DNA of 64,000 nucleotides, from the NCBI RefSeq assembly GCF_021869535.1, contig NW_026262723.1:1612001-1676000 (forward strand), given 5' to 3'. Every line of letters starts with the position of its first letter. Position 1 is the first letter of the stretch. The notes under the pieces were generated by a model that saw nothing but the letters and a program-made list of their open reading frames with translations, was not told the DNA's origin and ran no database searches. Shown piece after piece: positions 1,911-56,984 of this stretch. The translations under genes were made by a program, and so were the position numbers. The stretch comes from Mytilus californianus (taxonomy: Eukaryota).

Positions 1911-1974
1911 ATGGGGATTGTCGTAATGAAATGCTTTCTAGTGGTTCTTGGTATATCAAGATTAAATATACTTG
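1911..1974 (+). CDS. Gene A signal-peptide exon (MGIVVMKCFLVVLGISRLNIL+G)
   Basis: Acceptor ttacAG at 1885-1886, ATG at 1911, hydrophobic core, donor G|GTAAGT at 1975. The phase-1 end joins 30684 in frame to give ...NILEVQA-C, a plausible cleavage site. The link across the 28.7-kb intron is inferred. Confidence 0.7.
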
Positions 1975-30683: not shown

Positions 30684-30995
30684 AAGTTCAAGCATGTGAG
30701 AATATATCTTGTTTCATGTGGAGAAAAACAGGCATACAGATATCTATGTCGTGTTATATTAAAAATGTGTATTCATCTATACTTATACTTGATCCCTATA
30801 ACACGACGCAAGCAAATTGTTCAGCATTTAACAACACATTTGTCTGTGATGCACTGCCGGAAATTGGCGCATACTTCAATTCTTTAAAAAATGAAACAGT
30901 TTTACAATGGGATATATCACATGAATTGACAACTGGCAAATGGTTGTGCATTCATGGTGTAGATATAATCGAATTGTACATAAACCCAACAAAAG
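30684..30995 (+). CDS. Gene A exon: atypical Ig-like domain D1 (6 Cys, GxWxCxHG)
   Basis: Acceptor (t)11-cAG, 312-nt open phase 1-1 exon, donor G|GTAAG. The peptide aligns with gene B exon 55118-55438. Confidence 0.9.
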
Positions 30996-32264: not shown

Positions 32265-32621
32265 GCTCACACTTATCTATCAAAATAGGCATGAAAACAG
32301 AAATACAGATAAAAAACGACACGTATTTATTTACTTTCGAATGTAGTTCTTGCCTTACACCTTACGGCAATTCTGTTGAGTTCATATTAAATAACAATAT
32401 TCTGGATGTACTTCGAGAGAACAACAGGAAATGTTATCATAAATCGGGGGAATGCAATTACAAAACTTGTGTATGCTGTAAAGATTCTAATAGATATGTT
32501 TTGAAATATGAACTGCCGACAAAGACACAGATAAGTTCGTCTGGGTGTAGGATGAGATTTAACGATGAAAACCAGCAAGGCCTCGTGGTAAAAGAAGTAC
32601 TTTTACAATTCAACGATCTTG
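32265..32621 (+). CDS. Gene A exon: Ig-like domain D2 with a C-x6-C-x4-C-x-C insertion
   Basis: Acceptor ctttcAG, 357-nt open phase 1-1 exon, donor G|GTAAGT. Homologous to gene B exon 52314-52658 (C.S, V.F..NN, Cys cluster, LKY, C.M.F). Confidence 0.92.
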
Positions 32622-32938: not shown

Positions 32939-33085
32939 AAAGACACAATTTATCGCTGTTAATCTCCCGTGGAAATGGAACTTACATAGGATTTAAAGAG
33001 TCAGAGATCATATCAACAATAAAAAAATCAACAAAAGAGACAACAGAAAAAATTGAAACTGCACCACCAAACAAGAGTTTTTCAA
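32939..33085 (+). CDS. Gene A exon: Ser/Thr/Glu/Lys-rich stalk (ERHNLSLL...KESEIISTIKKSTKETTEKIETAPPNKSFS)
   Basis: Acceptor ttttaattAG, open phase 1-1 frame, donor A|GTAAGT. An alternative in-frame acceptor exists at 32989/32990. Confidence 0.8.
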
Positions 33086-34388: not shown

Positions 34389-34457
34389 ATTTGTATTTTG
34401 ATTTTGAAAGATCACACATTAGTCCGAAAGGCCATAAGGAATTAAGCTATACTCATG
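34389..34457 (+). CDS. Gene A candidate second stalk exon (NLYFDFERSHISPKGHKELSYTH)
   Basis: Acceptor tattgtAG, 69-nt open phase 1-1 frame, strong donor G|GTAAGT. Confidence 0.55.
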
Positions 34458-35388: not shown

Positions 35389-36400
35389 CTTCAAAAATAT
35401 TGTGATGAAGTATATTCAACCAGTGGTGTCAATCAAATGTGGATTGTCAAAAATTCTAAAGATCTACTGCTAAATCTTAGATCACAATCTCTGTAATTTT
35501 TCATCAACATTAAGACCTTGATTTTTCTACGCTTTACACTACTATTCCCCATGCTCAATTGAAAGATCGACTTCACCATCTCATTCAACAGAGTTTTTTC
35601 TGTAAAAATGGGAATCGTAGATATAAATTTCTTGTTTTGGGTTATACTAATTCTTATTTTGTGAAGAACCACACTGATTCTATCAGAAAATACACTGAAG
35701 ATGATATTATCAAAATGCTGGACTTTTTAATCGACAATATATTTGTTGAGTTTGGAGGATTGATATTTCAACAGACAGTCGGTAATCCAATGGGTATTAA
35801 TTGTGCACCCCTTCTGGCCGATTTGTTTTGTACTCGTGTGAAGCAGAATTCATTCCGAACCTTCTAAAAGACAAAAAGAAAAAGCACCTTGCGAAATTCT
35901 TTAACTTTACTTTCAGATATATTGATGGTGTCCAAACTGAATAACCCATTTTTCAGTCAGTACTTGCATCTCATATATCCCAGTTAACTCGAAATTGAGG
36001 ATACTACCGACACTAGAAGGACTGCTCCACACCTTGCTCTTTTCCTCAATATTGACACAGATGGACGACTTCACACTAAAATCTATGACAAACGGGATGA
36101 TTTCAACTTCCCAATTATCAATTTCCAATTTCTCAGCAGTAACATACCCTCTGCTACGTCGTTTGGTGTTTACATATCTCAATTGATACGTTATGCTCGT
36201 GCATGTTCACACTATACGGATTTCATATACAGGAGTGTGCTCCTTACGCAGGAACTGCTCCAACAGAGTTATGAGGAGGAAAGATTAAAAATGACACTCC
36301 GTAAATTTTATGGACACCATCACGAATTGTTTGATCTATAAGATGTGTCTGTGTCTAAACTAACTAACGACATTTTCACAATTAATGTTAGATTGTGGTT
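35386..36400 (+). pseudogene. 5'-truncated Penelope-like (Naiad/Chlamys-type) reverse transcriptase relic
   Basis: Contains GLQKYC...SGVNQMWIVKNSKDLL, IKTLDFSTLYTTIPH, FQQTVGNPMGINCAPLLADLF, FRYIDG (catalytic YIDD changed to YIDG at 35918-35929), IYDKRDDFNFPIINF, GVYISQLIRYARACS and KFYGHH, with several stops and frameshifts. Confidence 0.92.
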
Positions 36401-37600
36401 TACCATCTACGCCATCTGTCTGCTAAGTACCGAACGTGACCTATTCCCGAATATGACTGTTTTGCCGAGTGTGAATTCGCATTGCTATACGACGTGTCTC
36501 GGTATTTATACATCCAACATTCATGTATTTAGTTATGATGTTTCTTTTGTAATAACGGTTCGATATTGTGTTATGTCTTATCGTTTGTGGTTTGATTCAT
36601 TCTGTATTTTCGGTACATTTCACATATGTCTTATTTTTCAGTATAGTCGAGTTAATTTCCATTTTCCATGGATAAAGTATTGTGTTAGTTCGAATAATTA
36701 TGACGTCGTCACAGCATTAATTTAAAATAGTCTTTCAAGACCGTCATAATCATGATAATTATTTGGACTAGTATTGTGAAAATATTTGTGAATTTTTGGA
36801 TCTCGTTCCATATAATTGTATGAATGTCAAGATTATATATACGTCACAAAAATACGTCACTTGTTGTGGCGTTGATCCATTCATGTGACGTGCAGTTTGT
36901 GGTGTCCTGTGCTGTCGTTAATGGGAGATGTCCGTTGTTTTTCTGCGGTTTACATGTTGTAATGTACTATTATATTATTTATTTATGCATTTCTCTGTGC
37001 TGAGTGTTCTTGTGTTTGTTTGTATTGTATTCCTGTCACGTAGTGTTGTCATTTTAGCGATATGTTTTAACATTCTCATATAAGCGGGAGGTTTGGCTAG
37101 CCAGAAAAACAGGTTCAACCCACCATTTTTTCTTAAAATGTCCTGTACCAAATCAGGAATATGGCAGTTGTTTCTATGTATGTTGGCGTTTGTTTTTGTT
37201 GCAGTTCAGTGTTTCTGTTGTTCCGTTGCTTTTCTCTGATAGTTGATGTGCTTCCCTCGGTTTTAGTTTGTAACCCGGATTTGTTTTCTCTTAATCGATT
37301 TATGACTTTTAAACAGCGGTATACTACTGTTGCCTTTATTTACCTATCTCAATTTATACATTATATGAACATCATTAGCAGGAATGGACTTATAACGCAA
37401 ATCATGCTCCAAATGTTATTAATAAGGACGAGTGAAAGCGATATTATAAATATTTTACTATTACCATCATGAACTGATTTTCATATAATATAGTCTCATG
37501 AATAAACATTTCACACAGTTTAATATAATTTTTCAAAGTAATAATGCTAAAGTATTTCTTCTCCTGCAATATTTATTCATTTTTTTTTCTTTTTCTTTAG

Positions 37601-37686
37601 ATTTTAGAGATATATTTACCAGACTAGCAGTTGGGTTTGCAATTGTAATATTCATCGTGGCATTGGCATGTTGTTGTGTAACATAG
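37601..37686 (+). CDS. Gene A exon: hydrophobic TM/GPI-signal-like segment FRDIFTRLAVGFAIVIFIVALACCCVT* ending at TAG
   Basis: Long polypyrimidine acceptor, phase-1 entry, ~20 hydrophobic residues, CCC, and TAG at 37684-37686. The joined CDS is a multiple of 3 (966 nt, or 1035 nt with the 34389 exon). Confidence 0.88.
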
Positions 37687-37966
37687 GAATGCAAGTACGG
37701 TATATTATATTTTAAAACTGCCACATCGTTGTATAGCTTTGCCTGGTGAATTTTAATGATTTCGACATCTTGTAAATTTGCTTTAATTGTGAATAAAAAC
37801 TTACAAGGAGCTCATAATTTCCTAACAACATAATTGACGGCAATTTTGTTAGTGTAACGAATATAGTAAATGATATTTATACGCCTTTTGTTCTAATAAT
37901 TAGGTAGACTCTTCTAATAGGGCTTGGCCAGTACGTCATCTCAGAACTATTTTTTTCATATTTCAG

Positions 37967-37980
37967 GTATCGAACTAAAA
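37967..37980 (+). pseudogene. Candidate vestigial 14-nt cytoplasmic micro-exon of gene A (GIELK), downstream of the stop
   Basis: Strong acceptor ttttttcatatttcAG and donor GTATGT; phase 1 to 0, as in gene B micro-exon GLDISVDD. Confidence 0.45.
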
Positions 37981-40697
37981 GTATGTCAGTTGTATTTATC
38001 AATACTTCTTTAATAGAATCAGAACTGCTTTTGATAGAGTAAATTTTAAATACAAAGGGAAATTTGAAAATCATATACCCAATGAAACAGACAACGACAT
38101 GGTAAAATATAAAAACAACGAAAGGGTAAAACGTGTTATCAAAAAGTAGAAAAATATCTTAAGAATGTTAGCCGAATACTTCTAAAACAATCATTTAAGG
38201 AAGGATCATTGATAGTATTAGTGTAATATTTCAATCAAACCTTTAGCTTTTCTCATCTTTGATGGTCAGGCAGAAACACTTATCAGTCCGATATAAAGGT
38301 GTTCCACAACTTAATTTGGAAAGACCTTATTTTTTCTTTAAATTTCCTTAATTTGCATATATCTTAAAGATTGTTACAGATAGAATTGATCTGAAATGGC
38401 AACGTGCACAGGAACAGATGACATAATTAATTATTTGTTATCAACCCTAATAAAAATTGTTTTCCTTGATATATTATACACAATTTTGAATAGTTATATT
38501 TCGAGAACAGGATGTAGTAAAGACATCGGACCTTAGACACAAAACTTTCCGACCATCTGCTCAAAAGTCATGACTAGATAATTCTTTAAAGTATAGTTTT
38601 TTGTGTATATCTTTGAAACGGTAACCGATATCAACCTACCATAAACTGCAAAAATTATCAGTATTTTAAGATCTTTAATTTGTGGTCAATGTCAAGGGCA
38701 TGAGAAAATTTCACCTTGAATTGCAAAGGGTACTATAACCTTGACCTTGTAACTTTTTAAAAGGTCAAGTGGTCCTAAGTTGAATGGTGGTAGTCCCATG
38801 TCTCTACGACTCCAGATCTCAAGTTCGGTTTTGCATCATATATTAAAGTATTCATTCATTGTGCCCTAAATGAGCTACGGAATTGCCCAAAGTGTTGTGA
38901 CACTGTTGTATTTCACATGCAGATCAGTTTACACTTTGCAGATTATTGATAACTGTAATCGTTTGAGAGGTATTGCAGTTTGACGGGTGGGGGGATATGT
39001 TTAACATGGCTATATGTTTTACTAAATACCATAAACATTTGACGAAAAACAAAGAAAAATAAGCAGTTTGAAATTTTCATGTTATACATTGACTTTGTAG
39101 TAACATTAACGATACCAATTATTCTGCACGTGATGTGCATTTCGACAATAAATTTCTCTGCAATGATGCTTGAGGCCAAAATATTTGAAATTCCAAAGCT
39201 TATTAAAAAGATGAATAGCTATAAACTAAAAAGGCCAAAAAGTATGACCAAAGCCGGGCAAGGAATCAGAGCTTTGTTTCGACAAATTCAGTAAGTTTCA
39301 TAAGTTCTATTTATAAAATTGATATTGCATCATTTTTTAGACTTTGCCAAATGGGGTCATGTGACATATCAATTGATTATTAAATGAGCTCTCTTCAAAA
39401 ATGAAAATTTTAATCCCCTTTATCATCCTAAAGAGAAGGGTGAGGTCATTAAGTGTACAAAATAAATCTTACTAAATGGTGGTGTTGTCGCATATCAAGT
39501 CTACATTACAAATATCATACTTCAAATCTCGACAATTTAAGTGGATAGGGTCATTAAGTGCGAAAATTGAAAAGTTTAAAAGGTATGCTTCCCGCATATC
39601 AAGTGAAAGGTCGTTAAGAGTACATTACAAATATCAGACTTTGAAGGGAAAAACCTTTCAAGTGTTTCACAATCAATTGAGATACTTGTTATATGATGAG
39701 TTTTCTCTCTTGTCATTCATCAACTTAGCGAGTGCACAAGTGTATTAGGACCTGACGCATCATGTGCGTTCTTCCCGGTTTCTGACGGGCTTCGTGTTTC
39801 TAAATCGTTGCTCTTGAGTATTAATTTGCAGAGTAACATTGTCGTTTTTGGAGGATGGTGGTAGCTTTGTCATGTTTTATTTTTTTTATTTCTTGTTGGT
39901 GTCTTTTCTCCTCTTTTCTAAGTAATTTCAAAATACTTCTTGAACAATCTTTTATTTTCTATTAATGAATACACTTATGTGGTATGAACCAAGTTGCAAT
40001 GCTTGCTTGAATATCAAAAGCCTCTACTTTGAATTGTTCATATGTTAATATTAAGTATATTGCTCAATACGTTCTTGCCTGGATTGCACTAGATGTTGAT
40101 TTAGCTCTCTGCTTTGCTAAACCAAATCATTTGAAGTTTTTTATCGACTTATCTGTATGAGGAATTTTGGAGTAAGAATATAACCTGGTCGACTTGGAGT
40201 GACAATAAGTTGTCCAGTAGAGTTAAATAAATTTAGCTATTAACTATTTGTCAGCTCGTTCGTTTAAGCTAAGGCTTAGCATTTAATTTCAGTTTATCTA
40301 TGGTTTTGCTGCTCAGATACTAATACATTCGTGCCTTGGTACAGTGTTTAGCGTACATAATGAGAATTGAGGTATCGGTATTGTATTGTTATATAACATC
40401 ATGGAATATCCATTTATAGTAACGGCATACTTTAATTGAAAAAAAAAAAAACGTTTATGAACTTGAAATAAGTTGATTGATAAACATATATATCTTTACG
40501 TATTTATTTTAAATCAACAATTTGTTAGTATTATTATTACTTGCAGATTTCTAAATGCAAAAATAAAAATGTGACAATGTAAAATCTTGGAATAAAAAAA
40601 ACAATACATACCTGAAATCAAATTTAATAATAAAAATGTCATTTGTATGCATATTGCATTTCTTTAATTCAACATAAAGTTTTATTTATTTTTGTAG

Positions 40698-40778
40698 GAG
40701 AACATCGAATATTATAGTAAATCTAAAAGACATCGAGATGAATCTCAAGGAAGATACTGAGAAACTAAACAATCTCAG
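40698..40778 (+). pseudogene. Candidate vestigial cytoplasmic exon of gene A
   Basis: Acceptor tttttgtAG and donor AG|GTAAAC. Phase 0 gives ENIEYYSKSKRHRDESQGRY*; phase 2 is fully open (RTSNIIVNLKDIEMNLKEDTEKLNNLR). Confidence 0.45.
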
Positions 40779-42665
40779 GTAAACTCAATGTGAAAGGCAA
40801 AAACACAGACGGAAAAGCTACGTCCTTTGAAAATGGAGGGGATTCAATGAAAGCGCGTGTAGAAAACCAAATAGGCGAATATCACTTAGGAAGATAGTTT
40901 TCTCTACCAAACAATAGTGTAAACCAAATAATATTCGCCAGCAATTTATTTCCATAACGCGAACATAAATCATAAACAAATGTTTCAAACGTGCATAAAG
41001 GTTTAAAATCGCGAAATTTATTGGACCAATAGTTGGCGGGAAAGGGATAAACTTTAAAAAGGTATGTATCTTTCTGTCAATAAACGCAAAGGCCTTCAGT
41101 TGATTAACAATGAATACACACAAAAAAAGAACATTACGTCGGACCATGATACTTAGAATTTTGGAAATAACCTGTAGAGAAAAAAATGCCACAACAGTTT
41201 TCAAAAGATACAAGCATTAATTAAATGGATTCCGGGTAAAAGGAGAACAACTGTTTAAAATGAATATTCATCAACTGCAGTTACATTTTTCTCAATAAGA
41301 TTGGTATGCATTATGCATGTCCTTTGCAATCTGTTCATTTATCTGTTTTCTTAATTTATTCATATAGATTTTTAATATATTAAGTAATGAAACTAATACT
41401 ACCGAAATTGATACTAAACCATGGCAAGCATAACATGAGTCCATTGATCACATGTGGGACATTATCGTGCAAAAAATTAATCAGTGAGAACCCAGATGTA
41501 CAACACTTGCTGAACCGATAAATGGCTTGATTCAGGAATGGCAGATGTTCCAACAATTTTAACTCTGACGTCTTGCTATGGGAATGAGAAGACGTTTAAA
41601 TAATTTGCACCGAAAATGATGATGGTATATCCCAAAAGGCTTTAGGTATTTTAAACGACATTACATATGGGAATATTTAGCTTAAGGAACAAAGCCGTGT
41701 TGCTAATGCATTTAAAAATATGAAAATGAAATGCACATTGATACTTTTCATTGGTATTTTATTGCCGTTTTTTCTACTGTAATAAAAATAGTCATATAGT
41801 TTACCCAACATATGGTTCAGTCTTGTTCCTTGGTATTAATACCAATTGTGATCTAGGTTTTCACTAAATATCAATAGATTTATAAGTTTATGATTTGGAT
41901 TGATCCATGTTGTTTAATACTAACGTTTCTTATTCTAAAATGAAGCTTTGCTGAAAACCCAGGTGGTTATTAACTTTTTTCAGAGTGTTAAAATATAATG
42001 CGATTTTGTAACTTTTAGTTTTTGTTGTTGTTGTACTTGGTTATACTGCCTTTTTATTCATATTCATAATGTAAATGTACACCATTTTTATACATTTTAA
42101 CATCAAATGAAATATTTTTATTTAAACGATTTACACAATGTTGCTCTTGTACATCGTTACATCTAAGCTCATAAAAACAAACATATCGTACCAATTTTGT
42201 AACTAACAAGCTGAAACCTCAAAATGTTTGAATTCGAATGAAACATATAAACCATGCACATATATATGTTATATATGTAATGATAATTTTGCTGCACCTA
42301 CACATACGTTATTTTTCCCAGTAAACTTTACCTTTAAAAACTTACAAAAATGCATTTCGAAGGTGTTAGATTTCTTGCATGAACCTTATAAGAAGGAATA
42401 CAAGTTGAATGACAGAAATGTATTTAGTAGTGTGTAGATTTCTTCCATTAAAATAAACGTAGGATTATGAGTTGCATTCCTAATAGCTACAAGAGTATGA
42501 CAGTCTTAAAAACAGACCAAGGCTTGGGGTAGCAAAATAATTAATGTTCTTATCTACTTCATATATAAAAAATGAAGAGCAACTCAAATAGTGTTTACTG
42601 CTCGTAGCAATTTGAAAATGTTAGGTAATCAAATGTTTGATAGTACGAAATAATGAAAATGACAT

Positions 42666-42707
42666 GCATCCGAAGCGCTTTTCTGGATTTTCTTTCATCG
42701 GGAACGC
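42666..42707 (-). ncRNA. Degenerate minimal type-I hammerhead ribozyme, family 2
   Basis: Minus strand reads gcgttc CCGATGA aagaaaatcca GAAA a gcgc t TC ggatgc: stem I pairs, palindromic aagcgctt stem III, UUC triplet; U4-to-C change and weakened stem II. Confidence 0.55.
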
Positions 42708-43033
42708 TCAAACCCAAATATTTGAAAGTCAAGAATGTATAAGAACCAAAACAGTTGAAGAGCTATATGACCAAAAAGGACCTAAACAGGTTTTTTGTAT
42801 TTTCAATAAATATGAGGTCTCCCAAAAAAATTATCAAAATTCAATACCATTTTTTTGTGGCAACTACATGCTTCAAAATTATTTATGTCAAAATAATCCT
42901 AAAAAATGGATAAAGGAATGCCAATTTAAAAAGGAACATTAATTGAACAGAAACAGAATAAAGGAGACAAACAATCAGCAGAGATTATCAAGTTCTCAAA
43001 TCGATATCATTTTCTTAAGTGACGACTAATTTT

Positions 43034-43039
43034 TTTATT
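43034..43039 (-). terminator. Candidate polyadenylation signal of gene B
   Basis: AATAAA on the minus strand ~49 nt after the TAA at 43088; AT-rich context makes a chance match possible. Confidence 0.4.
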
Positions 43040-43087
43040 CCTTTTCACCGAAATTGGTATATTGCAGGAAAAGTAAAAATGATAAAA

Positions 43088-43268
43088 TTATTCTAATTCA
43101 AGATAATGATCAACATCTTCTGAGTACTCTTCTATTTCATCCTCCTTAACACTTGTCTCGGTTCTGCTTGAAACTTCTGGTTCTAAGTAATATTCCTCAA
43201 TTTCTTCGTAGGTAGAAGTCTCGTTGTAAATATTTACATTGTTGATCTGTCCAGGTGCAGCAAGATAT
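43088..43268 (-). CDS. Gene B terminal exon: acidic, Tyr-rich cytoplasmic tail with an ITIM-consensus motif
   Basis: Acceptor catcacAG, phase-2 entry, YLAAPGQINNVNIYNETSTYEEIEEYYLEPEVSSRTETSVKEDEIEEYSEDVDHYLELE*: 7 Tyr and 18 Asp/Glu in 59 aa. Confidence 0.88.
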
Positions 43269-43547
43269 CTGTGATGTATGATTTTATTAGTTTAATACGT
43301 GTTATATTGGAATTACTAACCGTAAAATTTAACAGTTTTACAGATAATATGTTTTTAGAAAAAAATCTATTTGTATTATGTTGACACCGGCAACATATTT
43401 GCATTATATGGGCATGATGGTTATTAGAATTTGTCTGATATTTTTAATTATGCTATGTGAAAGCGTTTCAGATGACGTTTGTAAGTAACATATTTTGTAA
43501 AAAAAAAGTATTCTATTCAGAAATAAACAGAAATAAACACAAAATAC

Positions 43548-43575
43548 TTTCTTCGTCCGTTGTTATTAGTTGTTT
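43548..43575 (-). CDS. Gene B candidate 28-nt cytoplasmic micro-exon (xTTNNNGRRK)
   Basis: AG/GT bounded, phase 1 to 2; it can bridge the TM exon to the terminal exon in frame. Confidence 0.45.
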
Positions 43576-44238
43576 CTAATATTTCATTAATGAATATGAA
43601 AATTGAAACTACAAAAATGTATTCATACATGTTCTTTTCTGTAAGGATAATACACAAAATGCTAAGTCTTGAACTTGTTGCAGGTGTTAAAACATTCAAT
43701 ATAGTACAATTCGATCAATTATGAACTGAAATTAAAGTGTCTATTTCCTGAATTCAAAGTTTTCAAATTCATTCCTATCTGAAGGACCAGTCCTCAAATC
43801 TTCTCTTAAACGTACACCACACCTATTGCAATTACAACATTTATACTTTATGCTGGATAAACGTTGACGTCTTCATTTTCAACCTTCTCACTACATCTGG
43901 TAATATTTACCGTTCACGAATAATCATAATGACCATATGTTATATTTGATGTCTTGAATAACGACAATATCACTCTTCTACAAAAATTTTCACTCAAAGA
44001 GTTGATATACTGATAAGCTAAAAATATAAGTTTGAACCTGGACTGTTACTGTTACTGCATTGTGTCCAAGCTTATTTAACATAATGAACAGAATGCAAAA
44101 AGAGAGCACACCGATACGTTTTCCTAATAGGTAATGTATTTGAGGTAGTTAATATAAATCTTTAAACTTAGCAGATCAATCAACAATTATTCGTCATCAA
44201 TCTTCTTTCTTCTAAATAAGGAAAGAAAGCTGTCTTAC

Positions 44239-44261
44239 ATCATCGACAGATATATCTAATC
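44239..44261 (-). CDS. Gene B candidate 23-nt cytoplasmic micro-exon (GLDISVDD)
   Basis: Acceptor gtgtttgcAG, donor GTAAGA, phase 1 to 0. Confidence 0.55.
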
Positions 44262-46196
44262 CTGCAAACACATTCCATTTCAGTAGTGTTTTGTTTGTAA
44301 ATGACATTACATTAGGTGTCCTTACAAAAATCGTTGAAATGCTTAATTAACATATTGCACTTTTTCCAAATCTACTAATATCCAGTCCATCACAAATCAG
44401 TCGATTAAAAAACTGACAACGCCATGGCAAAACACAAACGAAGCACAACTGGAAGACAGTGTACAAAACTTAACATAGAAAACTTAAGACTGAGCAACAC
44501 GAACCCGACAAAAAAACCTGCGACGATCTCAGATGCTCCGGAAGGGTAAGTAAATTCTGCTCCACATTATATTATGGATCGAATGCGGTATACACCATTC
44601 ATTTATGTCGTGTACACAATCTGACTGAAATGCATTGCTATAGGACAAGAGTTTAGTTACATGTCATAAAAAGATTGAATTCGGGTGTATCTGATGAAGG
44701 TAAACTTAATTCGATTTTGGCGCGAATTTTAGTTTGGCATACTTTTGTTATCCCAAGACAGCATGTAAATATTGCTTATTTGTCATTAAGAAGGAAGGGT
44801 CAGAAGATTCCTGCTCCACAAGTGAAACCTGGAGTATATTTCTCAATACGATATTTCTGTGCTTGTTCTCCACTTCATGAATCATTCCTCGTAGATTGTT
44901 GCTGGGGAAAACTACGTAAAACAGAGGTAAAGTCATATTCGATGGTTTTATTCAATATTTTCACAATAACAATAAACAATACAACCGCATCGTTTTCCTT
45001 TGTTCGTTATGGAATTTTTAAAATGACAGCAGAAATTCTTCTAAAAAATATTTAAAATTACCATTTAAACAAAGTGTTTCCGATGTAATTAACATCCTAG
45101 TTACAAAAGGTTAACATGAGTTTAAAGATATAATGACCAGTACAAATGACTCTTCCTTAACCCTGCCACCGAAGAGATAAACGTTGAAACAAAACCAAAA
45201 TTATAAGTAACAATAATTGGTACAGATAGCCTTGAACATGTGTTTACTAGCTCTACATGTGGTGGGTTTAACAATTGCAATTACATGTGCACAATCCGGG
45301 ATGAAGGTCGGGAAATTTGGACTGCCACTATCAAATGAGGGTGTTTTGGACATGGACAGATATTTTACATTGCAGCAGGTAGACAACGGACCCTCAAAGC
45401 GTTGTAAGAGTTCTTAACCTACAGAGAGCATGGCACTCTCTCTACAAGAGGCATCGCATTTAACGTTCGATTCTGCAGACGTCGCTGCATACGTATACAT
45501 CCCGCAGAGTCACACGGATGTCCCACTTTGGCATGGGTTTTACTGCCGTTTGTAAAAAGGTCAAAAGTGACATCTTTTTTTATTCCGCAGTCACTATTGA
45601 AGGTATTTTCTTAATCATTTCTTAATTATACAACGGGGAATTTTTTTAAATACAATGTATATCAAAAATAATGCCAGTACCAAAGCACCGACTATTGAAC
45701 TGACGTCTGTGATGATACCATCAGACTAACAGTTTACCAGCAGTTGAATCAACACACAGTTCATCAACTAACAGAATGTTCACTTAGTATTTGTCTGCAA
45801 TGTTTGTTTGCAAAAAAAACAAACATGCACACGGTCAAAGAAATACAATAACGGTGTGTCGACTATCCATATCAACCTTAAAAATAACTCATTATCTTAT
45901 CTGACACAAAGATAATCTTTCAAATTACTCACATTGCTCTTGAGGCAGCAAGTAGTCTCTGTGTATCTATAAGAATGATGAGTATCATTATTGGTGATGA
46001 CGTTTTAAACAAACAACAAATTTGAAGATTTCTTTTTATTTTTATTTTGCATAAACATATTTTCTGAGTTCTGTGATTCTGAATAATCTATATTTAAAAT
46101 GTTGACATTCACTGTGATCATAACAGTCTTAGATGTATGTTTTATTCCGCGAGAAATATTTCTATTAATATATAATTGTGGTCTCATTTTGGATTA

Positions 46197-46620
46197 ATTG
46201 ATTGTTGGTTGCTAAACGTCCAGTGGCAACTATTTCATACATGTTCTGGACGAGAACAAATTAATCATAAATACAATAGGTAGGTCCGGAAATAAAATCC
46301 GTCCGTGACAAAGGTTGGGGAAATTTTTACTGCCACTGGAAAATGAGGGTATAGTTGATAAAGACAGAAATTTTGTCTTGCAATAGGCCACCTACGAACT
46401 TCTCAAAGAGTTGTTGCAAGGGTTCTTAACCTGTAAAAAGCGTGGCTCTCTCCTTACACAAGGTATCGGATTCAATGTCCCCATTCTGACCAGAAGTGGC
46501 TGCGGACTTGTACATCCCACGCAGCCAACAGACACCCAACTTCGGAAGGTGTTTTATCATCGACCGGAAGAAGACCAAAGTGACCATATTTCAATTCCCC
46601 AGGCCAGTCACTATTGAAGG
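46197..46620. mobile_element. Dispersed SINE-like repeat (ttgattgttggttgc...aacgtccagtggcaa family)
   Basis: Diverged copies at ~7705-8030 and 45290-45602 and end fragments at ~9172-9225, 25843 and 57435-57480. The (TTGA/TTGG)n end resembles a SINE tail on the opposite strand; classification is inference. Confidence 0.6.
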
Positions 46621-46903
46621 TCTCATTTTGGAAGAAAGGTATAAGAAAGATGGCCTTATTCAATTAGAAAATACAATTCTAAATTTTGATTTTGTATACT
46701 TCAGTTTTATGAATTTAACAAAGCCATAACACACTTAATCAATTGCAGTATACATCACTGACAAAATCATTGCAAACGAAAGAATACTGCAATCTTGTAT
46801 GATTCCAAGATGAAAGTATTCCCTTTTGAATAGATAAATCTTGATGTTTTTGGCCTCTATATTGGTTTGATAGGTTTAAGCTTTTACTTGTTATTAAACA
46901 TAC

Positions 46904-47011
46904 CTCGTCTTTGCCGGCAAATTAAGGCAATTGATAAAATAACTGAGACAACAAACAGCAAAGTTGCAAGTAATATCCAGCTTAACAGTCTAATGTTAAA
47001 AACATTAGAAC
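46904..47011 (-). CDS. Gene B transmembrane exon (GSNVFNIRLLSWILLATLLFVVSVILSIALICRQRR)
   Basis: Acceptor ttttttccAG, phase 1-1, 23-aa hydrophobic run followed by a RQRR stop-transfer, donor G|GTATGT. Confidence 0.92.
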
Positions 47012-48346
47012 CTGGAAAAAATGAATATCATGATCATTTTTTTTTAAAAGTTAATAAAAAGTTATATGTGTTTCTTTTAAACTAACTTAAATAAATACAA
47101 TGTATCGATATTTTTATGTTTGGTATCAAATTACCAGGAGGAAATTAACCTGCAACTTAATGAAATATATCTTTAGAGTGTATGAGAATGTAACTCGACT
47201 GCTACCAGTTTTACACATTCATACCATAACTGATGATCTTTTCATGACTATAGATTACAAGAAATAAGTACAGTTTAAGTAAAAATCTACCTTTTTAATT
47301 TTTTTGATTTTGTTGTGTAATTTTGAAAGGCGTTAAAAGATAAATTTAATAGAATGTTCAATTTGTCGTCGCCGAAATTCCGTTATCTTTTCCTCATCAA
47401 ATGCGACCACCAAAGAAATTTTACTTGCAATTAGTAACACGGCTGGTGCCACTAGTGAAGCACAAACTTCTTACCCTTACTTGAAGTACTCTATTTATAT
47501 TAAATAGTTTCGTGTTCTTATTGCTTTTGTAGTCAGTGTTATATTTGGTGCCTTTTTAATTTCATTACGTATATTCACTAAGAGACTTTCCGTTATTGTG
47601 TGTAGCCTTGATATGACTAATCAATGTTTTTTCTATGAGTAACATGGCTTATTTAAAGTTTCTCTTTTTGTCCATGGTGTTGATTGTTTTATTCGACAAG
47701 TTTTTTGGGATGCCTTATGGTATTTTCTGTCTTTTTGCTTTACCATTTAATAATTTAAAACACAGAAAAGACAACATTTGTGTAAGCTGCATATATGTAT
47801 TATTGGAGATTATTTGGAATAAGTACTATAGCAGGTCAGATTTTCCCCAATATTTCATACAGAATCATTGAATGTAGTAATACAGAGACTAGTTTTGGAA
47901 CTTTTTGAACTCATTTCTATACATGCTTACTCTGGGAATATTACACACTAGTACATAAAATACTACAAATACAAAAACTATCGTTTTATATTTTGTGTCA
48001 ACTTGGTGCCTTTTATGTTGTCTCATTGTACATGTATGAGTTTTCTTCTTGAATGAAGTCAGTATAAGTGCCTATAGCTATTTATAACTTTTTTTGGACT
48101 TTGGTGGGTAGTTGTCTTTTTGTAAACCATTTTCTATAATGTATATCTCGTAACTATGCATAAAATAAATACTGCTTAATGTGTTTATGATACTTCATAC
48201 TTTGAATCCAGGCAATATACGACAATTTAAGGAAAACAATTTATTTGAATGTATTTCTTCGCAAGTAGATATGTATGTTCGTTACAAGGAATGTGGTGTC
48301 TTATTTGTGACAGAGTGTTAATTTTTTAGAGAAAGTAAAGTAATAC

Positions 48347-48667
48347 CATTGTCATGATTGTTGAATTCAAATTCTATTTTCGTCGTTCCGTAATCATTAT
48401 CAAGCAAAATATAGCACTTAAATATGCCGTAGTCTTTGTTGATCACAGTGAGATTTGCGATGTACCCGTTGTGGGTTAAAATTTTCCCAAACATTCTTAT
48501 CACTAAAATATCCGTCGACATATTTTGGAAAAATCGTGTTGAGTTTGGAAGCAGCATATTTTTATAAAACCACTTCGGGTTGTACGGATTTTGCATTGAT
48601 AGAAACTTGGCAGATAATGTGATAGTTGTGCCCATTGTAATAATTTTGTCAATTACCACTGGTGGAC
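48347..48667 (-). CDS. Gene B exon: membrane-proximal Ig domain D5 (W and DYGxxxC present, B-strand Cys absent)
   Basis: Acceptor tttttcatctAG, 321-nt phase 1-1 exon, donor G|GTATTA. Confidence 0.9.
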
Positions 48668-49505
48668 CTAGATGAAAAACAAAATGATAAAACTTCCATT
48701 TCATTAAATACTTTTGATTTTATATATTTAATTACCAGAAACAAAATTATATACGCTGATTCGTTCACGCAAATTTAACGCGTTGTGGGTAAACTTGATC
48801 CATGCATCATTGGACTGATGAGATCATTGTTTCCACTTCACATTTTGAAAGCTTCTGTCTATATTCGTATGTTCATTTTTCAACACTATGTTCAGATTTA
48901 ATATATTGAATTTTTCATTATCCCATTTATCTAAGCTGCGATGCGAATAATATATCAATTAAGATATTCAGCTCTTTTTTAACGTACTGATACGGATTTT
49001 CTTTTCTGAACAAACGCAATTAAAACGGCAAGATGTTTTTAAATGTAAACATGCAGCAAAAAAAAATGTTATGAATTGCAAGAAAACGCCAAGATAAACA
49101 TAAAGAACATATTAATAAAAGAACCACTAAATTTAAATTGTCAAAGTACATTTTAAAGCTTACAAATCGTTTTGTTGTTGTTGTTATTGTTGTTGACAAC
49201 ACTGGCGCATTACTACATCAAGAAGTGCATGCAAATAGAATTATTGAATTTTTATATATTGAGTTAAATTAACATTCGGAGTTTTGTCCCAACAGCCATT
49301 TAACTAATTGATGCGAAAACGAATTGTTGAAAATGCTAACTCATTATCAAATGTACATAAAGATTATCAATTGTTGTACCTTAAATAGTGAGTTGAATCA
49401 TCATTCAGAGCTTTTGTACTTCAAGCCATGTTACAAAGTATTAAGAAGATTAATTGATGATTTCTTAACGTAGTTAATAATAAGACAAATAGATAAAATT
49501 ACTAC

Positions 49506-49796
49506 CTGTAACAATTACACTGGTAGTCTTATTTTGACGGAATATTTTTTGAGGATCTTGGTTCCATGCTACACATATGTATTCACCATTGTCCTCATAA
49601 TTACAAGAATCGATTGACAAAAATGAAACATTTCCTGTAATATTTCCTGCCACAGATCTTATATATGTACCATGAAATCTGTGCTCCCATGGAGAAAATC
49701 CAAATTCTGACATTTCGCCACTGACTTCGCATGATATAATGACTGAATCAGTGTTGTTGCAGATCACCTTATCATTCATATTAAGAATGGGAGCTC
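49506..49796 (-). CDS. Gene B exon: canonical I/C2-type Ig domain D4
   Basis: VIISCEV...PWEH...LSIDSCNYEDNGEYICVA carries the C-W-DxGxYxC signature; acceptor attccAG, donor G|GTAGT, phase 1-1. Confidence 0.95.
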
Positions 49797-51658
49797 CTGG
49801 AATTTGATTTACAATGATATCAAGCTATAAGTATAATAAACACACAAATTCAATAATCTTTATAAGTAGTTATCCATTTTTAAGTGAAAGATAAGATCTC
49901 ATATATTTCGTAGAATTTGCATAGAAAGTCAGTTTGACCTATTGTAGCAGTTTGTACATGCCGTAATCTCGTATGGTTATTATCAACTGTCCACTGCTTT
50001 CAATATTGTTTCCACAAATATTATTTCAATGCAATCGAAACTAGACAAGACTCCTTTGGGTGGGGGAGTTCAATGTGAACCAATTGTTTTATTTTCCATT
50101 GTTGTCTGTTTTTTGCATGGACATTTGAATCAATTTTTTGTTTGTTTTGTTGTTGCATCTTTCTCGACTTGTTTATTTATATTCATTGACTTGTTTATTT
50201 ATATTCATTGACTTGTTTATTTATATTTATGTTAAATTTGTTGATTTTTCTTACAACGCATTCGCATCAATTAATGTCTACTCTTTCCTATATATCGTTA
50301 AGTTTCGAGGTTAAAGGATTGTGGGTAATTTCACAGCTGTACACCAACATGAAAATGACGTGGTATCATCAGCTCGATATCAACTTACATTTAATCAATC
50401 ATCGATCGATAAGAACACTGTTACCCAATAATATTGTACACTTTTGAAAAAAAAAGCATCTAGAATACAGTAGACTCTAGGACGGCAAATATCCGTGTGC
50501 ATTGAAACATTGTCATTAATAGATTTATCATTATATTATTTTAACATTGATTAATACCATACATAAAACCTATGTACAAATTTCCTTAAATGCAAATAAC
50601 AAAACAATGATATATGGATTACAAAACAAATACAATCAAATGTTGATAATGCTATGATTTAAGTTTTCTCTTTGTCAGCGTGTAATATCTCAGTACGTAT
50701 ATAGTGACTAATCCTCTGTCCTATTGTATTGAATTTACATTTCTAGCATGTTTATATTCTCATTAAGACACTTATGCCAACTTTTCATGAAGCAAGTGCG
50801 TGAGATTTGGCTAAAATTGTAAAGATCAAAGAGAAAAAACAATAGATCAAAGGAAAATGCTGCCAAATGAGCATGAAAATTTAGCGTGAATGCGTGAGAC
50901 TTGGCAGCCCTGTAATAAGAGGAGTTCATTAACTGGGATTTTTTTTTTTGCTTCTAAACGACTAAAATTAACGTCTCAGTTTTTATGGTCACCATCACTA
51001 ACAGAATGGTCTGTGTCTCAAATCACGAAGTCCTATTTCTTAAAACACCAACATAGTCGTCTGATCAGCAATTTTAACGATGGCGGATGAATATCATTCC
51101 CTACAGTTTCTTTTGTTGGTGTATCCCACGTGGTGTATTTAAGGTCATGTTTGGGTTTTCAACATCATTAAACAATTTTTGTACATCATTTCTCATATGA
51201 AGTACAGACAAGTGACAAAACTGAATAAGGTCACATAAGAAAACAATACAGGTAATCTCGTATCTATAGATTATCATATAAATGAGGGTCGTAATGGGGT
51301 ACATTGTACCTTCATGACGAATAACGGTAAAAATCTTGCCAGATGCCGTTAACGGTAATTTTTGGTGCATTACGATAAAATGTACACTTTCTTTAAGACG
51401 ATAAAAAAAAATGACTGCTTTTGCCGAATCACGTTAAATTTTTTCCAAAAATAACGGTAACGGAGAATTATTTGAGACCTCTGACGAATCACGATAAGGA
51501 TATTTGGACAAATCACGATAACATTTTAACCAATTTGACGCTAACGGTAGCCGAAAATGATCGTTTGACGCCTGACGGTAAAGGGCATTCCATAAATAAC
51601 ATATATGCATATATAAATAAAAAAAAAAAAGATGTGGTGTTGTCAACTGTATACTTAC

Positions 51659-51931
51659 TTATTACATGTAATTTGATTGACAATGACCTTGTAATAACGC
51701 CTGACGCTTTACATGAACACGTTGTTCCATTGTCGAATGACGTCACCATTTTGGAAACTTTAGCGACGTATGTATTATGTTCACGCTTATTTGTTTGAAC
51801 AACTGTTTCAAGGCATTGCATGTAAATTTGGAGTAGGTAATCCCTGGAAATTGTTTTGCACATAATTTCAACAACACTGCCAGCAGATAATGGAAATTCT
51901 TTATCAAATGAAATGAAAGGACCATTTATAT
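51659..51931 (-). CDS. Gene B exon: C2-like Ig domain D3
   Basis: INGPFISFDKEFPLSAGSVVEIMCKT...FDNGTTCSCKA...IKLHVI; acceptor ttcttcttgcAG, donor A|GTAAGT, phase 1-1. Confidence 0.9.
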
Positions 51932-52313
51932 CTGCAAGAAGAATTTAAACAAAATGGAGAAATTATTTTTGACAAATAATTATACAAATATGATATAAAA
52001 AGCATTTTAAGTCTCATTTGTTTCCAGGGTATTTGTGTTGTTGCCTGAGAAACTCAAATCATGAGCAACAGTAGTCTCGGGGAAAGAACACTCTAAAAAA
52101 TGTTTAAATGGTTTTGTCAAAAATTAACACCCCCACTGTAAACGAAAATAGATTTTTAGTATATTTTGGTTTCTTTTTACAGAATTTGAAACCTCATTGA
52201 AGCCGTTGATCACTGCGTCAGGTTCACATTTTGTTATTACACATATAAAGTCTTGCATTTTTTTGTGATACATACAAAAGAGTGATGATAATGAACTTTA
52301 TTTTTATACGCAC

Positions 52314-52658
52314 TAACTACTGATACGAAAAGACAATCAGATAATGAGCCAAACATCTTGAAATCCATAGAACATCTAAATGCTAAGTCCCCGCTATCTA
52401 ATTCGGCAAAATACTTCAACGTGAAACTTCTACCTTCCGCAAAACACTGGCACATATCACTTTGACAAACTGATGCCTCCAAGCTTGAGAAACAACCGCT
52501 TGCATTTGTACTTATTTTTGTATAAAACTGATTGTTAACATGAAAATAAACCGCTGAAACTGTCGATGCTGTATTTGAGGTACACAACAGTGATATCTGT
52601 TGTTGCCTTTGGACATATTTTGGTCGACTTAACGTTATTTTCGGGGATACTTCATAAC
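52314..52658 (-). CDS. Gene B exon: Ig-like domain D2 with a C-x8-C-x4-C-x-C insertion
   Basis: Acceptor tttttttcAG, open frame, donor A|GTGCGT (phase 1); homologous to 32265-32621. Confidence 0.9.
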
Positions 52659-55117: not shown

Positions 55118-55438
55118 CTAATTCCTTTGACACTTTAACCTCGACACTGACGTCATCGAATCCATGAACACACCTCCATAAACCATTTAATGGATGATCA
55201 TTGTGAGGTCTTTTAACGACATATGCTGTTTCACCAGATGACAAGTCTTGTGTTATGTTGTTCGTATTTGAAAAACACATTGAATTTGGGTATGGCAGCA
55301 AGCAGTGCGCTATTTCATCACCGGACGGATTATATATTGTGACGCTAGATACTATTTTATCTGCTTTGCACGCTATTCTAAGCTGATCACTGTTTACACT
55401 CCAGCTGATGCATATACTTCCGTAGATGTCGATAATAT
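55118..55438 (-). CDS. Gene B exon: atypical Ig-like domain D1 (GxWxCxHG)
   Basis: Acceptor ttttaaaacAG, 321-nt phase 1-1 exon, donor G|GTATAG; homologous to 30684-30995. Confidence 0.92.
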
Positions 55439-56984
55439 CTGTTTTAAAAAAAAATCAAATAAGTCTAAAACAAACCTGGAACAAATTCTAGAAATGTACG
55501 ATAAAAGCTATACATACATCATTGGTTCAATACACTATTTAAGTAGCAGTCTGGCTAAGAATCATGCAAAATGATGAAATAGTGATTTACGGTATGTCGC
55601 AGAAATTTACAATACTTTTTGTGAAGTTTGTACTGAATTTTAAATATAAGACCATAAAACACAGTATTTTTCTTGGTCCTACATATTAAATGTTTGGAAA
55701 TGTGAACTTTCCCCACTTATTCTAGTATAAAAATTTTCTTCTATTTTCTTCAAAGACCGGATGTTTTAAGGAAAATGGTTAAATCCAAAATAAGGAAAAT
55801 AATTTTCTTTAAAACATATGAAACCTTGTACTGTATTTGAGTAAATTTGTTTTTATTTTGGAGTAAACATGATATAAGAAAGATAACTCTCTCTAATATA
55901 ACAACAGTTGCCATGTTACTGAAAAAACATTCAAAGACATTATCTTAATGGAATTTAAACATTGCCATTTTATTTCTTTGTATGAAAATACAGAGTGGTT
56001 CATATTCAATATTAAGGAATAAATAGCATAAAGACTTTGATTCTCTTCATTCACCGGCCCCTGAACTGCAATGTTTACATTTTGAATTACTCACTTCGGT
56101 TTGAAAAGATTTTTACGTCTGTTTGTATTTCATTCGATCTTGTACAGATTTATGTCGTTTTTACCGTAACGGGCGTTCATACCTTTGAGGAGATACTGTG
56201 GATGACGGGGGATATTTTTGAATGTATTTAGACAAAGGCAAGTCCTTTCACATCTGTTCCAGTGAGATGTTGATCTGTCTCCGTTGTACTAGTAGTTTTC
56301 AATTTATCAGAATTTTATAAACGATATCCCCAACCAGTAAGACAAGATGACTGCAGCACATACATTGTAAATCATTTAAGAAAACCGAATTGAAAATATT
56401 TGAAGTACAATCAAGACAAAGGGAAGTTTCAAAATGAGCAAGCATGACATAGCTTGTGAAGAGCGTTTTTTTTTTTATGTCGTCGTCAGACCATGTGTGG
56501 TTTTCACTACCAACCTTTCTTTTGGCTGTTTGCCCTTTTCACTCTTGGAAAGGATTTCAAATAGGGAAAACAGTGTAATCATCCTCTACGCAATATAAAA
56601 AAGAGAGCCATAAGATGAGAAACCAGTCAGCAAAGCAGGAAGATCCTATGGACCATGGAGTAATGGTAAGCGGTGGTAATACTTAATTTATTGTAAATTC
56701 ATTATTCTTCCTGTGAAGACGATTTATATTGATGTATTCAAATGATATAAACACCCATCAGGGATCCAGTGTTATAATGATTAGGGAATTTACGATAGAA
56801 AAGATCCATAAAAAGATGGCAAATTTAAAAATTTGATCTGTTTACAAAGACAGAAAATCAAAATTCGCCTTGGGTTCTATCCGCATTTTTGAAATTATAC
56901 ACTTGCTGTAAAAGTTAGAGCTTTATTGCATTTACCTTGTCCATCTGTTTGTTTGTCTGTCTATCTGTTAGTCTTTCTTTAATG

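What the first reader, a model, noticed from the sequence alone, without database searches (positions are those of the whole stretch)
37601..37701. A single TAG in gene A's TM exon may turn a signalling receptor into a tailless or GPI-anchored form
Seen: ...ALACCCVT-TAG-ECKY-G|GTATAT; the frame stays open past the stop up to a phase-1 donor (as in gene B's TM exon), and a phase-2 donor option exists at 37695. Established: primate GPI-anchored CEACAMs arose through stop mutations in a TM exon, and a C-terminal hydrophobic stretch with no tail is the GPI-signal pattern. Inference: a recently created decoy, a segregating null allele, or a readthrough-regulated switch. The end CCVT also fits a CaaX pattern.
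Basis: partly seen in the sequence, partly recalled or inferred. Interest (0 to 1): 0.8.

Follow-up and report, generated by a model that had tools for sequence, protein, structure and literature searches.

The report
Natural stop of tailless mussel receptor
The TAG is real, but it is the annotated stop codon of a living Mytilus californianus gene for a two-Ig-domain membrane protein whose cytoplasmic tail is tiny and unconserved in relatives, so no signalling tail has been lost.

Summary
TAG sits at 37684-37686, directly after a 20-residue hydrophobic span, in an exon that starts at 37601. The frame stays open to GT donors at 37695 and 37700.

The interpretation mostly fails. Six window exons reproduce NCBI protein LOC127709409 of Mytilus californianus exactly (344 aa), and that protein ends ...CCCVT. 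So the TAG is the annotated stop.

The gene is alive. It encodes a signal peptide, two Ig-like domains (D1 dN/dS 0.11 against M. trossulus), a disordered stalk and a membrane helix.

RNA contigs bound this exon and begin again at 40698, the last exon. Reading through the TAG would add only 10 or 30 residues, with no tyrosine motif.

The syntenic M. trossulus gene has two extra bases here. It reads the same letters TAGGAAT out of frame and stops after an 8-residue tail. A coded sister species reads AAG (Lys) in DNA and RNA.

The TAG-bearing words occur in runs from at least 7 samples of 3 studies, and once in a sister-species sample. The tail is short and labile, and the stop is probably old.

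GPI anchoring is untested and weakly supported. The CaaX match is incidental.

The parts
1911..1974 (+). Gene A exon 1, coding part. It holds the start codon and the signal peptide (MGIVVMKCFLVVLGISRLNIL) and ends at a phase-1 donor G|GTAAGT.
   Evidence: It aligns to the annotated first coding exon of the M. trossulus orthologue. It is needed to reproduce P0105 exactly.
30684..30995 (+). Gene A exon for Ig-like domain D1 (312 nt, phase 1-1).
   Evidence: It is 90% identical in nucleotides to M. trossulus, with dN/dS 0.11. The AlphaFold model shows a beta sandwich at residues 31-121.
32265..32621 (+). Gene A exon for Ig-like, cysteine-rich domain D2 (357 nt, phase 1-1).
   Evidence: pLDDT exceeds 90 for residues 133-240. 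dN/dS is 0.39-0.49 against three relatives. The genome holds at least 64 D2-like exons.
32939..33085 (+). Gene A stalk exon 1 (147 nt).
   Evidence: tblastn with P0003 and exact reconstruction of P0105. The model is disordered here.
34389..34457 (+). Gene A stalk exon 2 (69 nt). It ends CAT G|GTAAGT.
37601..37699 (+). Gene A transmembrane exon, the penultimate exon. Its 3' end is at 37694 (donor GTACGG, equivalent to the annotated M. trossulus donor) or at 37699 (donor GTATAT). This is not resolved.
   Evidence: In one search the RNA contig depth is confined to about 86-88 nt of the 37600-37799 bin, and organism A RNA (X9) has zero depth at 37800-38399. The arithmetic on from_end values favours a piece end near 37695.
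37684..37686 (+). TAG, the annotated stop codon of LOC127709409. The protein ends ...ALACCCVT.
   Evidence: It is transcribed in organism A. Organism B reads AAG in DNA and RNA. The TAG-bearing words occur in 7 samples of 3 studies.
40698..41544 (+). Gene A last exon, which is 3' UTR in this species. The acceptor is tttttgtag|GAGAAC. The would-be second stops lie at 40715-40717 (frame of donor 37699) and 40780-40782 (frame of donor 37694). The 3' end of the exon is not determined.
   Evidence: In one search, X9 record 16 joins at 40698 (its letters 250-562) and X16 record 12 starts at 40698. The exon is homologous to the annotated M. trossulus last exon. Frames are given.
40902..41303 (+). A 402-bp stretch inside the last exon that is present here and absent from organism B. 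It is probably an insertion in this lineage.
   Evidence: table 5. The skip 40901->41304 is seen in organism B's DNA contig (X10) as well as its RNA contig (X16). Organism A RNA contigs run through it (records 16, 17).

Best explanation
The TAG at 37684-37686 is the genuine, annotated and transcribed stop codon of a functional gene, Mytilus californianus LOC127709409. The gene encodes a type I membrane protein: a signal peptide, two Ig-like domains, a disordered stalk of about 75 residues, and a strongly hydrophobic C-terminal helix with at most one or two residues (VT) beyond it.

The stop lies in the penultimate exon, 8 or 13 nt before the last exon junction. The last exon is therefore 3' UTR, and the message is predicted not to be an NMD target under the mammalian 50-55-nt rule (inference).

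This gene lineage never shows a conserved cytoplasmic tail. M. trossulus reads an 8-residue tail in a frame shifted by a 2-nt indel. A close sister species reads RK... and runs on for 11 or 31 codons. This species stops at once.

The most likely history is as follows (inference). A 2-nt indel in the membrane exon brought the pre-existing letters TAG into frame before this species and its sister split. The sister later lost the stop (T>A) and gained a basic stop-transfer pair.

The protein most likely works as a membrane-anchored ectodomain, with the conserved juxtamembrane cysteines as likely palmitoylation sites (inference). It would have to signal, if at all, through a partner.
For: - Six window exons translate exactly to P0105, 'uncharacterized protein LOC127709409 [Mytilus californianus]', 344 aa, ending CCCVT.
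- The gene is alive. D1 has dN/dS 0.11 and D2 0.39 against M. trossulus, and the pooled value is 0.37. D2 gives 0.41 and 0.49 against two further relatives.
- The AlphaFold model has two confident beta sandwiches and a helix at 318-342. Foldseek matches two-domain Ig chains with probability 1.0.
- In one search, RNA contigs of organism A read T at 37684, with coverage bounded to the exon. Pieces resume exactly at 40698, behind a pyrimidine tract and an AG.
- Organism B reads A at 37684, G at 37682, T at 37673 and A at 37691, in both DNA and RNA contigs.
- The M. trossulus locus is syntenic. Its membrane exon has 2 extra nt and reads CCA TAT AGG AAT CCA G|gt. Its last exon reads AA GAC ATA TAA, giving the tail PYRNPEDI.
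- The last exons align only with indels that are not multiples of three.
- There is no tyrosine motif in either downstream frame.
- The TAG-bearing words are held by 8 runs of 7 samples and 3 studies. One of the two words is also held by a run labelled organism B.
- Family tails range from 0 to several hundred residues.
Against: - The splice 37694/37699 -> 40698 is inferred from piece ends and depths. It was not among the listed joints (73 joints not shown).
- The raw RNA run X21 gave no coverage of the exon.
- Which donor is used is unresolved.
- The polarity of T against A, and of the 2-nt indel, rests on one outgroup. A parallel change cannot be excluded.
- Organism B's letters in the first codons of the last exon were not shown, so its exact tail is inferred from this genome's letters.
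- Logan contigs show that an allele is present, not that another is absent. A non-TAG allele in this species is therefore not excluded.
- Membrane anchoring, palmitoylation and NMD escape are inferences. The NMD rule comes from mammals.
Confidence: 0.8

Rival explanations
1. A recent point mutation (AAG>TAG) in M. californianus cut the tail off a receptor that had one, creating a decoy or a loss-of-function allele.
For: The sister species reads AAG in both DNA and RNA. There the codon is preceded by AGA (Arg), giving a classic basic stop-transfer pair. The four A/B differences in the exon all lie in its last 27 nt and all change the protein.
Against: - M. trossulus shares T at the aligned position and the whole heptamer TAGGAAT, so one change in organism B is more parsimonious.
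- What would be lost is 11 or 31 residues without any known motif, and it is not conserved in M. trossulus.
- TAG-type words occur in every listed sample of the species and in one organism-B-labelled sample.
- RefSeq annotates the TAG as the stop.
Confidence: 0.12
2. The tail-less C-terminus acts as a GPI-attachment signal. The hydrophobic span is cleaved off and the ectodomain is lipid-anchored, as in primate CEACAM5-8.
For: - The protein has a signal peptide, a disordered polar stalk, and 20 hydrophobic residues that run to the C-terminus.
- Ser313, with Thr315 at omega+2 and a 9-residue spacer, loosely fits the pattern described in PMC10491789.
- The CEACAM precedent of a small deletion followed by a stop in a membrane exon is documented (PMC2832619).
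Against: - The only candidate omega site has Tyr at +1 and Thr at +2. The other small residues fail at +2.
- The span is as hydrophobic as the family's true membrane anchors (mean Kyte-Doolittle 3.04 against 2.2-3.6). Efficient GPI signals are reported to need marginal hydrophobicity. That is known here only from the title of Galian et al. 2012, as cited in PMC10491789; the paper itself could not be read.
- The same span anchors tailed orthologues.
- The conserved C-x-C cysteines suit a retained helix.
- No GPI predictor was available here.
Confidence: 0.1
3. The TAG is leaky. Programmed readthrough switches between a tail-less and a tailed form.
For: The frame is open after the TAG to a donor and on into the last exon.
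Against: - The extension is 10 or 30 residues with no motif, and it is not conserved.
- The base after the stop is G, and I know of no readthrough context that matches (own knowledge).
- No ribosome or peptide data were available.
Confidence: 0.03
4. Gene A is a decaying pseudogene, and the TAG is one of its lesions.
For: Intron 1 has swollen to 28.7 kb with repeats. A reverse-transcriptase-like fragment lies in the intron before the membrane exon. RNA depth in the one RNA-like run of this species is low (3.2).
Against: All coding exons are open, with canonical phase-1 splice sites. D1 has dN/dS 0.11. The gene is transcribed and spliced and annotated as coding.
Confidence: 0.03

Closest known systems
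M. trossulus LOC134726768 (P0003), the syntenic orthologue
   Same: It has the same exon order (signal peptide, D1, D2, two stalk exons, membrane exon, short last exon) and the same convergent neighbour gene. Identity is 74-79% in D2. The membrane helix matches closely (LAVGFAIVIF...), with the juxtamembrane C-x-C retained.
   Different: Its membrane exon is 96 nt, two bases longer up to the equivalent donor. The letters TAG are therefore out of frame, and the protein continues for 8 residues (PYRNPEDI) and stops in the last exon.
GPI-anchored CEACAMs of primates and pig, made from a CEACAM1-like transmembrane exon
   Same: [quoted passage not shown] Here a 2-nt indel puts TAG in frame, and the neighbouring gene B carries a tyrosine-rich tail.
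   Different: In the CEACAMs an ITIM-bearing tail was cut off and the hydrophobic span was remodelled into a working GPI signal. Here there is no conserved tail, the full-length and very hydrophobic helix is kept, and the omega site is poor. GPI anchoring was not shown.
Short-tailed members of paired immune receptor families (KIR-S, LILRA, CD300 and the like; from own knowledge)
   Same: An IgSF ectodomain with a minimal cytoplasmic tail, lying beside a long-tailed, tyrosine-motif relative.
   Different: Those receptors carry a charged residue in the middle of the helix to bind ITAM adaptors. Here the only basic residue (Arg324; Lys in M. trossulus, Arg in P0005) sits at the outer edge of the helix. 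D1 of genes A and B share only 21% identity, so they are not a matched pair.

Membership tests
Ig-superfamily type I membrane protein | N-terminal signal peptide | tested here: met
   Exon 1 encodes MGIVVMKCFLVVLGISRLNIL, which is conserved in M. trossulus. The model shows a helix at residues 2-12. No SignalP run was possible.
Ig-superfamily type I membrane protein | Ig-like beta-sandwich ectodomain(s) | tested here: met
   The AlphaFold model has two beta sandwiches, with D2 at pLDDT above 90. Foldseek best hits are two-domain Ig chains (Fab chains, NTB-A) at E about 1e-5 and probability 1.0. Whole-model TM-scores are low (0.2-0.3). Pfam finds nothing.
Ig-superfamily type I membrane protein | Single hydrophobic membrane span after the ectodomain | tested here: met
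   Residues 325-344 have a mean Kyte-Doolittle score of 3.04 over 19 residues. The model predicts a helix at 318-342.
ITIM/ITAM-type signalling receptor | Cytoplasmic tail with a tyrosine motif ([SIVL]xYxx[ILV] or YxxL/I pairs) | tested here: not met
   The annotated protein has no tail. Neither read-through frame contains such a motif. The M. trossulus tail PYRNPEDI has none either.
GPI-anchored protein (C-terminal attachment signal, pattern as in PMC10491789) | 15-20 hydrophobic residues at the very C-terminus, behind an N-terminal signal peptide | tested here: met
   The 20 residues LAVGFAIVIFIVALACCCVT end the protein.
GPI-anchored protein (C-terminal attachment signal, pattern as in PMC10491789) | Small omega residue, small omega+2, and a hydrophilic spacer of about 8-12 residues | tested here: inconclusive
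   The rule was applied by hand to ...KELSYTHDFRDIFTR. Only Ser313 (with Tyr at +1 and Thr at +2, and a 9-residue spacer containing I and F) fits loosely. Asp317 fails at +2 (Arg). No predictor was available.
GPI-anchored protein (C-terminal attachment signal, pattern as in PMC10491789) | Hydrophobic span of only marginal hydrophobicity (Galian et al. 2012, known from its title as cited in PMC10491789) | tested here: not met
   The mean Kyte-Doolittle score of 3.04 equals or exceeds most true membrane anchors of the family. This is a crude scale, not the delta-G predictor.
GPI-anchored protein (C-terminal attachment signal, pattern as in PMC10491789) | Release by PI-PLC or chemical detection of the anchor | not testable with these tools
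   This needs a bench experiment.
CaaX prenylation substrate | C-terminal Cys-aliphatic-aliphatic-X, with X from the farnesyl or geranylgeranyl sets, on a cytosol-accessible end | tested here: not met
   The last four residues are C-C-V-T. The a1 position is Cys, and X is Thr, which is not a canonical determinant (own knowledge). Cys341 lies inside the predicted helix 318-342. The same cysteines are followed by tails in M. trossulus and organism B.
NMD-sensitive premature stop (50-55-nt rule, mammals) | Stop more than 50-55 nt upstream of the last exon-exon junction | tested here: not met
   The TAG ends 8 or 13 nt before the junction, depending on the donor. The junction itself is inferred.

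The most novel reading that the evidence does not exclude
The tail-less (TAG) and tailed (AAG, RK...) forms may be an old polymorphism shared across the two sister mussel species. One TAG-type word occurs in an organism-B-labelled sample. Such a polymorphism could be kept by selection because the tail-less form, whether palmitoylated or GPI-anchored, behaves as a decoy or raft-resident variant of a fast-evolving immune-type IgSF receptor that lies next to a tyrosine-tailed neighbour.
Probability: 0.07. Interest if true: 0.5.

Novelty: new member of a known kind. Interest (0 to 1): 0.17.

Why it matters
The result matters mainly as a correction. What looked like a disabling nonsense mutation is the normal end of an annotated, selectively maintained gene.

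Three smaller points remain:
- It shows how freely the C-terminus of a lineage-specific mussel IgSF family turns over. Three Mytilus species give three different endings, produced by a 2-nt indel and a stop/sense change.
- It illustrates that a stop in a penultimate exon with an open frame behind it need not be premature.
- It gives a first description of a large, Pfam-less family (at least 64 D2-like exons in this genome) of two-Ig-domain membrane proteins in mussels.

Tried and rejected
- blastn of the gene A region against the gene B region found no DNA similarity. At protein level only D1 matched, at 21% identity. Gene B cannot guide gene A's tail.
- A blind scan for phase-1 tail exons between 37700 and 43000 gave nothing convincing, and it missed the real acceptor at 40698 because the open frame there is too short.
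- Pfam found nothing for D1, D2, P0105 or most relatives.
- A word search with the membrane-exon open frame (65 aa) found nothing.
- A word search with D2 gave only two genomic fragments, L026 and L027, which lack the membrane exon.
- The raw RNA run X21 (6% of it read) had no reads on the exon. Its only coverage was on repeats. It therefore gave no strand, no start or end, and no listed joint for gene A.
- Galian et al. 2012 could not be read.
- An early working idea was that gene A had only D1, D2 and a membrane exon. It was dropped when P0003 and P0105 revealed two stalk exons and a far-upstream first exon.
- Another idea was that the membrane exon is a terminal exon using the AATAAA at 37793. 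It was dropped because organism A RNA depth is zero from 37800 to 38399.

Full report
**The observation.** The window is AT-rich animal DNA with no N. At 37601 an exon starts behind ...ttttctttag. In phase 1 it reads D-FRDIFTR-LAVGFAIVIFIVALACCCVT. TAG follows at 37684-37686, then GAA TGC AAG TAC G, with GT at 37700 and another GT at 37695. Gene B's membrane exon on the minus strand (47012-46904) ends ...LICRQRR-G|gt in phase 1. The stretch is single-copy in the 1.65 Gb genome.

**What the gene is.** A profile-free search of all proteins with the D2 exon found P0003, whose annotated gene lies in assembly GCA_036588685.2. A word search with P0003 then found P0105, named by NCBI 'uncharacterized protein LOC127709409 [Mytilus californianus]', and identified P0003 as 'LOC134726768 isoform X2 [Mytilus trossulus]'.

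- Six window exons translate exactly to the 344 residues of P0105, which ends ...ALACCCVT. They are 1911-1974, 30684-30995, 32265-32621, 32939-33085, 34389-34457 and 37601 onward. The TAG is therefore the annotated stop of a RefSeq gene.
- All internal exons are phase 1-1.
- An AlphaFold model built on 99 family sequences gives a signal helix, two beta sandwiches (residues 31-121 and 133-240, the second above pLDDT 90), a disordered stalk (246-315) and a helix at 318-342.
- Foldseek places the ectodomain among two-domain Ig chains. Pfam sees nothing.
- The family is large and divergent. At least 64 D2-like exons occur in this genome, the closest at 42% identity.
- Cytoplasmic tails in the family range from 0 to several hundred residues.

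**The gene is alive.** Against the syntenic M. trossulus locus (L028, colinear and including the neighbouring gene B), D1 has dN/dS 0.11, D2 0.39, and the pooled value is 0.37. Two further relatives give 0.41 and 0.49 for D2.

**Reads.**
- In organism A an RNA-like contig set (X9) reads the reference letters over 37673-37691. It covers only about 88 nt of the 37600-37799 bin and has zero depth at 37800-38399.
- A 562-nt contig of the same depth (3.2) aligns its letters 250-562 to 40698-41010.
- In organism B (a coded congener, about 5% divergent in the flanking introns) a high-depth contig covers the exon. Another begins exactly at 40698.
- Position 40698 follows tttttgtag and is homologous to the annotated last-exon acceptor of M. 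trossulus.
- I infer an intron from 37695 or 37700 to 40697. The joint itself was not among the rows shown. Depth and from_end arithmetic favour the donor at 37694|37695, which is also the position equivalent to the M. trossulus donor. This remains unresolved.
- The raw RNA run X21 did not cover the gene.

**What lies beyond the TAG.** With donor 37699 the frame gives ECKYG-EHRIL and stops at 40715-40717. With donor 37694 it gives ECK-RTSNIIVNLKDIEMNLKEDTEKLNNLR and stops at 40780-40782. That is 10 or 30 residues, with no ITIM-like or YxxPhi motif. The TAG ends 13 or 8 nt before the last junction. Under the 50-55-nt rule (mammalian, established knowledge) the message would not be an NMD target.

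**Comparison across species.**
- Organism B reads T at 37673, G at 37682, A at 37684 and A at 37691, in both DNA (X10) and RNA (X16) contigs. Its exon therefore ends ...CFCV-RKEYK..., with Lys in place of the stop and a basic pair behind the helix.
- M. trossulus reads ...TGT TTT TGT GTA CCA TAT AGG AAT CCA G|gt and then AA GAC ATA TAA, giving the tail PYRNPEDI.
- M. trossulus has two more bases than A. Its membrane exon is 96 nt and symmetric (my count from the sequence). The heptamer TAGGAAT is shared by A and M. trossulus.
- No 2-nt insertion was listed for organism B, although such a row would have had top support. I infer that B shares A's length.
- Parsimony thus makes T at 37684 ancestral to A and B, with the in-frame TAG created by the indel and organism B's A derived. 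By a rough neutral argument this is about ten times likelier than a parallel change. It still rests on a single outgroup.
- The last exons of A and M. trossulus align only with indels that are not multiples of three. Nothing downstream evolves like coding sequence.

**Frequency.** Every 31-letter word of 37654-37714 contains the T. The two sampled words are held by 8 runs of organism A, from 7 samples and 3 studies. One of the two is held by a run labelled organism B. In the first search three more samples held all 33 words of 37451-37850. Contigs cannot show that another allele is absent.

- GPI anchoring. The C-terminus has the gross pattern described in PMC10491789. However, the only loosely fitting omega site is Ser313 (Tyr at +1, Thr at +2). 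The span is as hydrophobic as the family's true anchors. It anchors tailed orthologues. The conserved C-x-C suits a retained, possibly palmitoylated helix (inference).
- CaaX. C-C-V-T fails at a1 and X, and it lies in the predicted helix.
- Readthrough. It would add only a short, unconserved peptide.
- The CEACAM precedent is correctly recalled (PMC2832619) and is mechanistically similar, being a small deletion followed by a stop. There, however, a real ITIM tail was lost and a working GPI signal evolved.

**Verdict.** This is an ordinary, annotated stop of a tail-less IgSF membrane protein with a labile C-terminus, and its interest is low.

The repeats and the reverse-transcriptase-like fragment in the introns were only observed.

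Noticed in passing
window 2519-30557: Intron 1 of gene A is 28.7 kb here but only about 0.4 kb in M. trossulus. L028 3100-3260 matches window 2373-2519, and L028 3262 onward matches window 30557 onward. About 28 kb of repeat-rich DNA has therefore been inserted, including tandem units of about 320 bp near 11.4-12.6 kb.
   Followed up: partly
window 40902-41303: A 402-bp stretch in gene A's last exon (3' UTR) is missing from the sister species in both DNA and RNA contigs. It carries an AATAAA at 41079.
   Followed up: partly
window 40698-43399: In the sister species' RNA-like run, contigs at depth about 300-580 run unbroken from 40698 past 43399. They cross gene B's last coding exon (43091-43291, minus strand). 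Either gene A has a 3' UTR of more than 2 kb that overlaps gene B antisense, or this is gene B's own 3' UTR. Contigs give no strand.
   Followed up: no
window 43091-55454, minus strand: Gene B is a convergent neighbour. It has five large domain exons (55454-54948, 52770-52240, 51944-51516, 49824-49477, which hits Pfam Ig_3 below the cutoff, and 48719-48321), a membrane exon at 47012-46904, and an acidic tyrosine-rich last exon at 43291-43091. Its tail exon is conserved in synteny in M. trossulus (L028 11779-12092, 76%).
   Followed up: partly
window 45609-45727, minus strand: Behind an AG there is an open frame reading ...SDGIITDVSSIVGALVLALFLIYIVFKKIPRCIIKK, followed by a stop. It is a second hydrophobic span with a short basic tail, lying inside gene B's intron. 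It could be an alternative short-tailed terminal exon, or chance.
   Followed up: no
window 38400-39700 and 42660-42790: These are very high-copy repeats. Summed contig depth reaches 1e5-7e5 in the sister species' DNA run, with many loose ends and internal joints in all four runs.
   Followed up: no
window 35514-36338, plus strand: A reverse-transcriptase-like open frame fragment (...FVEFGGLIFQQTVGNPMGINCAPLLADLF...) lies in the intron between stalk exon 2 and the membrane exon. It was only observed.
   Followed up: no
L028 3389-3698 (M. trossulus): The D1 exon is intact and strongly conserved (dN/dS 0.11). Yet the two annotated M. trossulus products at this locus (218 and 232 aa) are too short to contain it. 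The annotation there probably misses a D1-containing isoform.
   Followed up: partly
window 37673-37691: All four differences between this species and its sister inside the membrane exon lie in its last 27 nt, and all change the protein (C/F, T/R, stop/K, C/Y). No differences were listed in the first 72 nt. The flanking introns differ at about 5%.
   Followed up: partly
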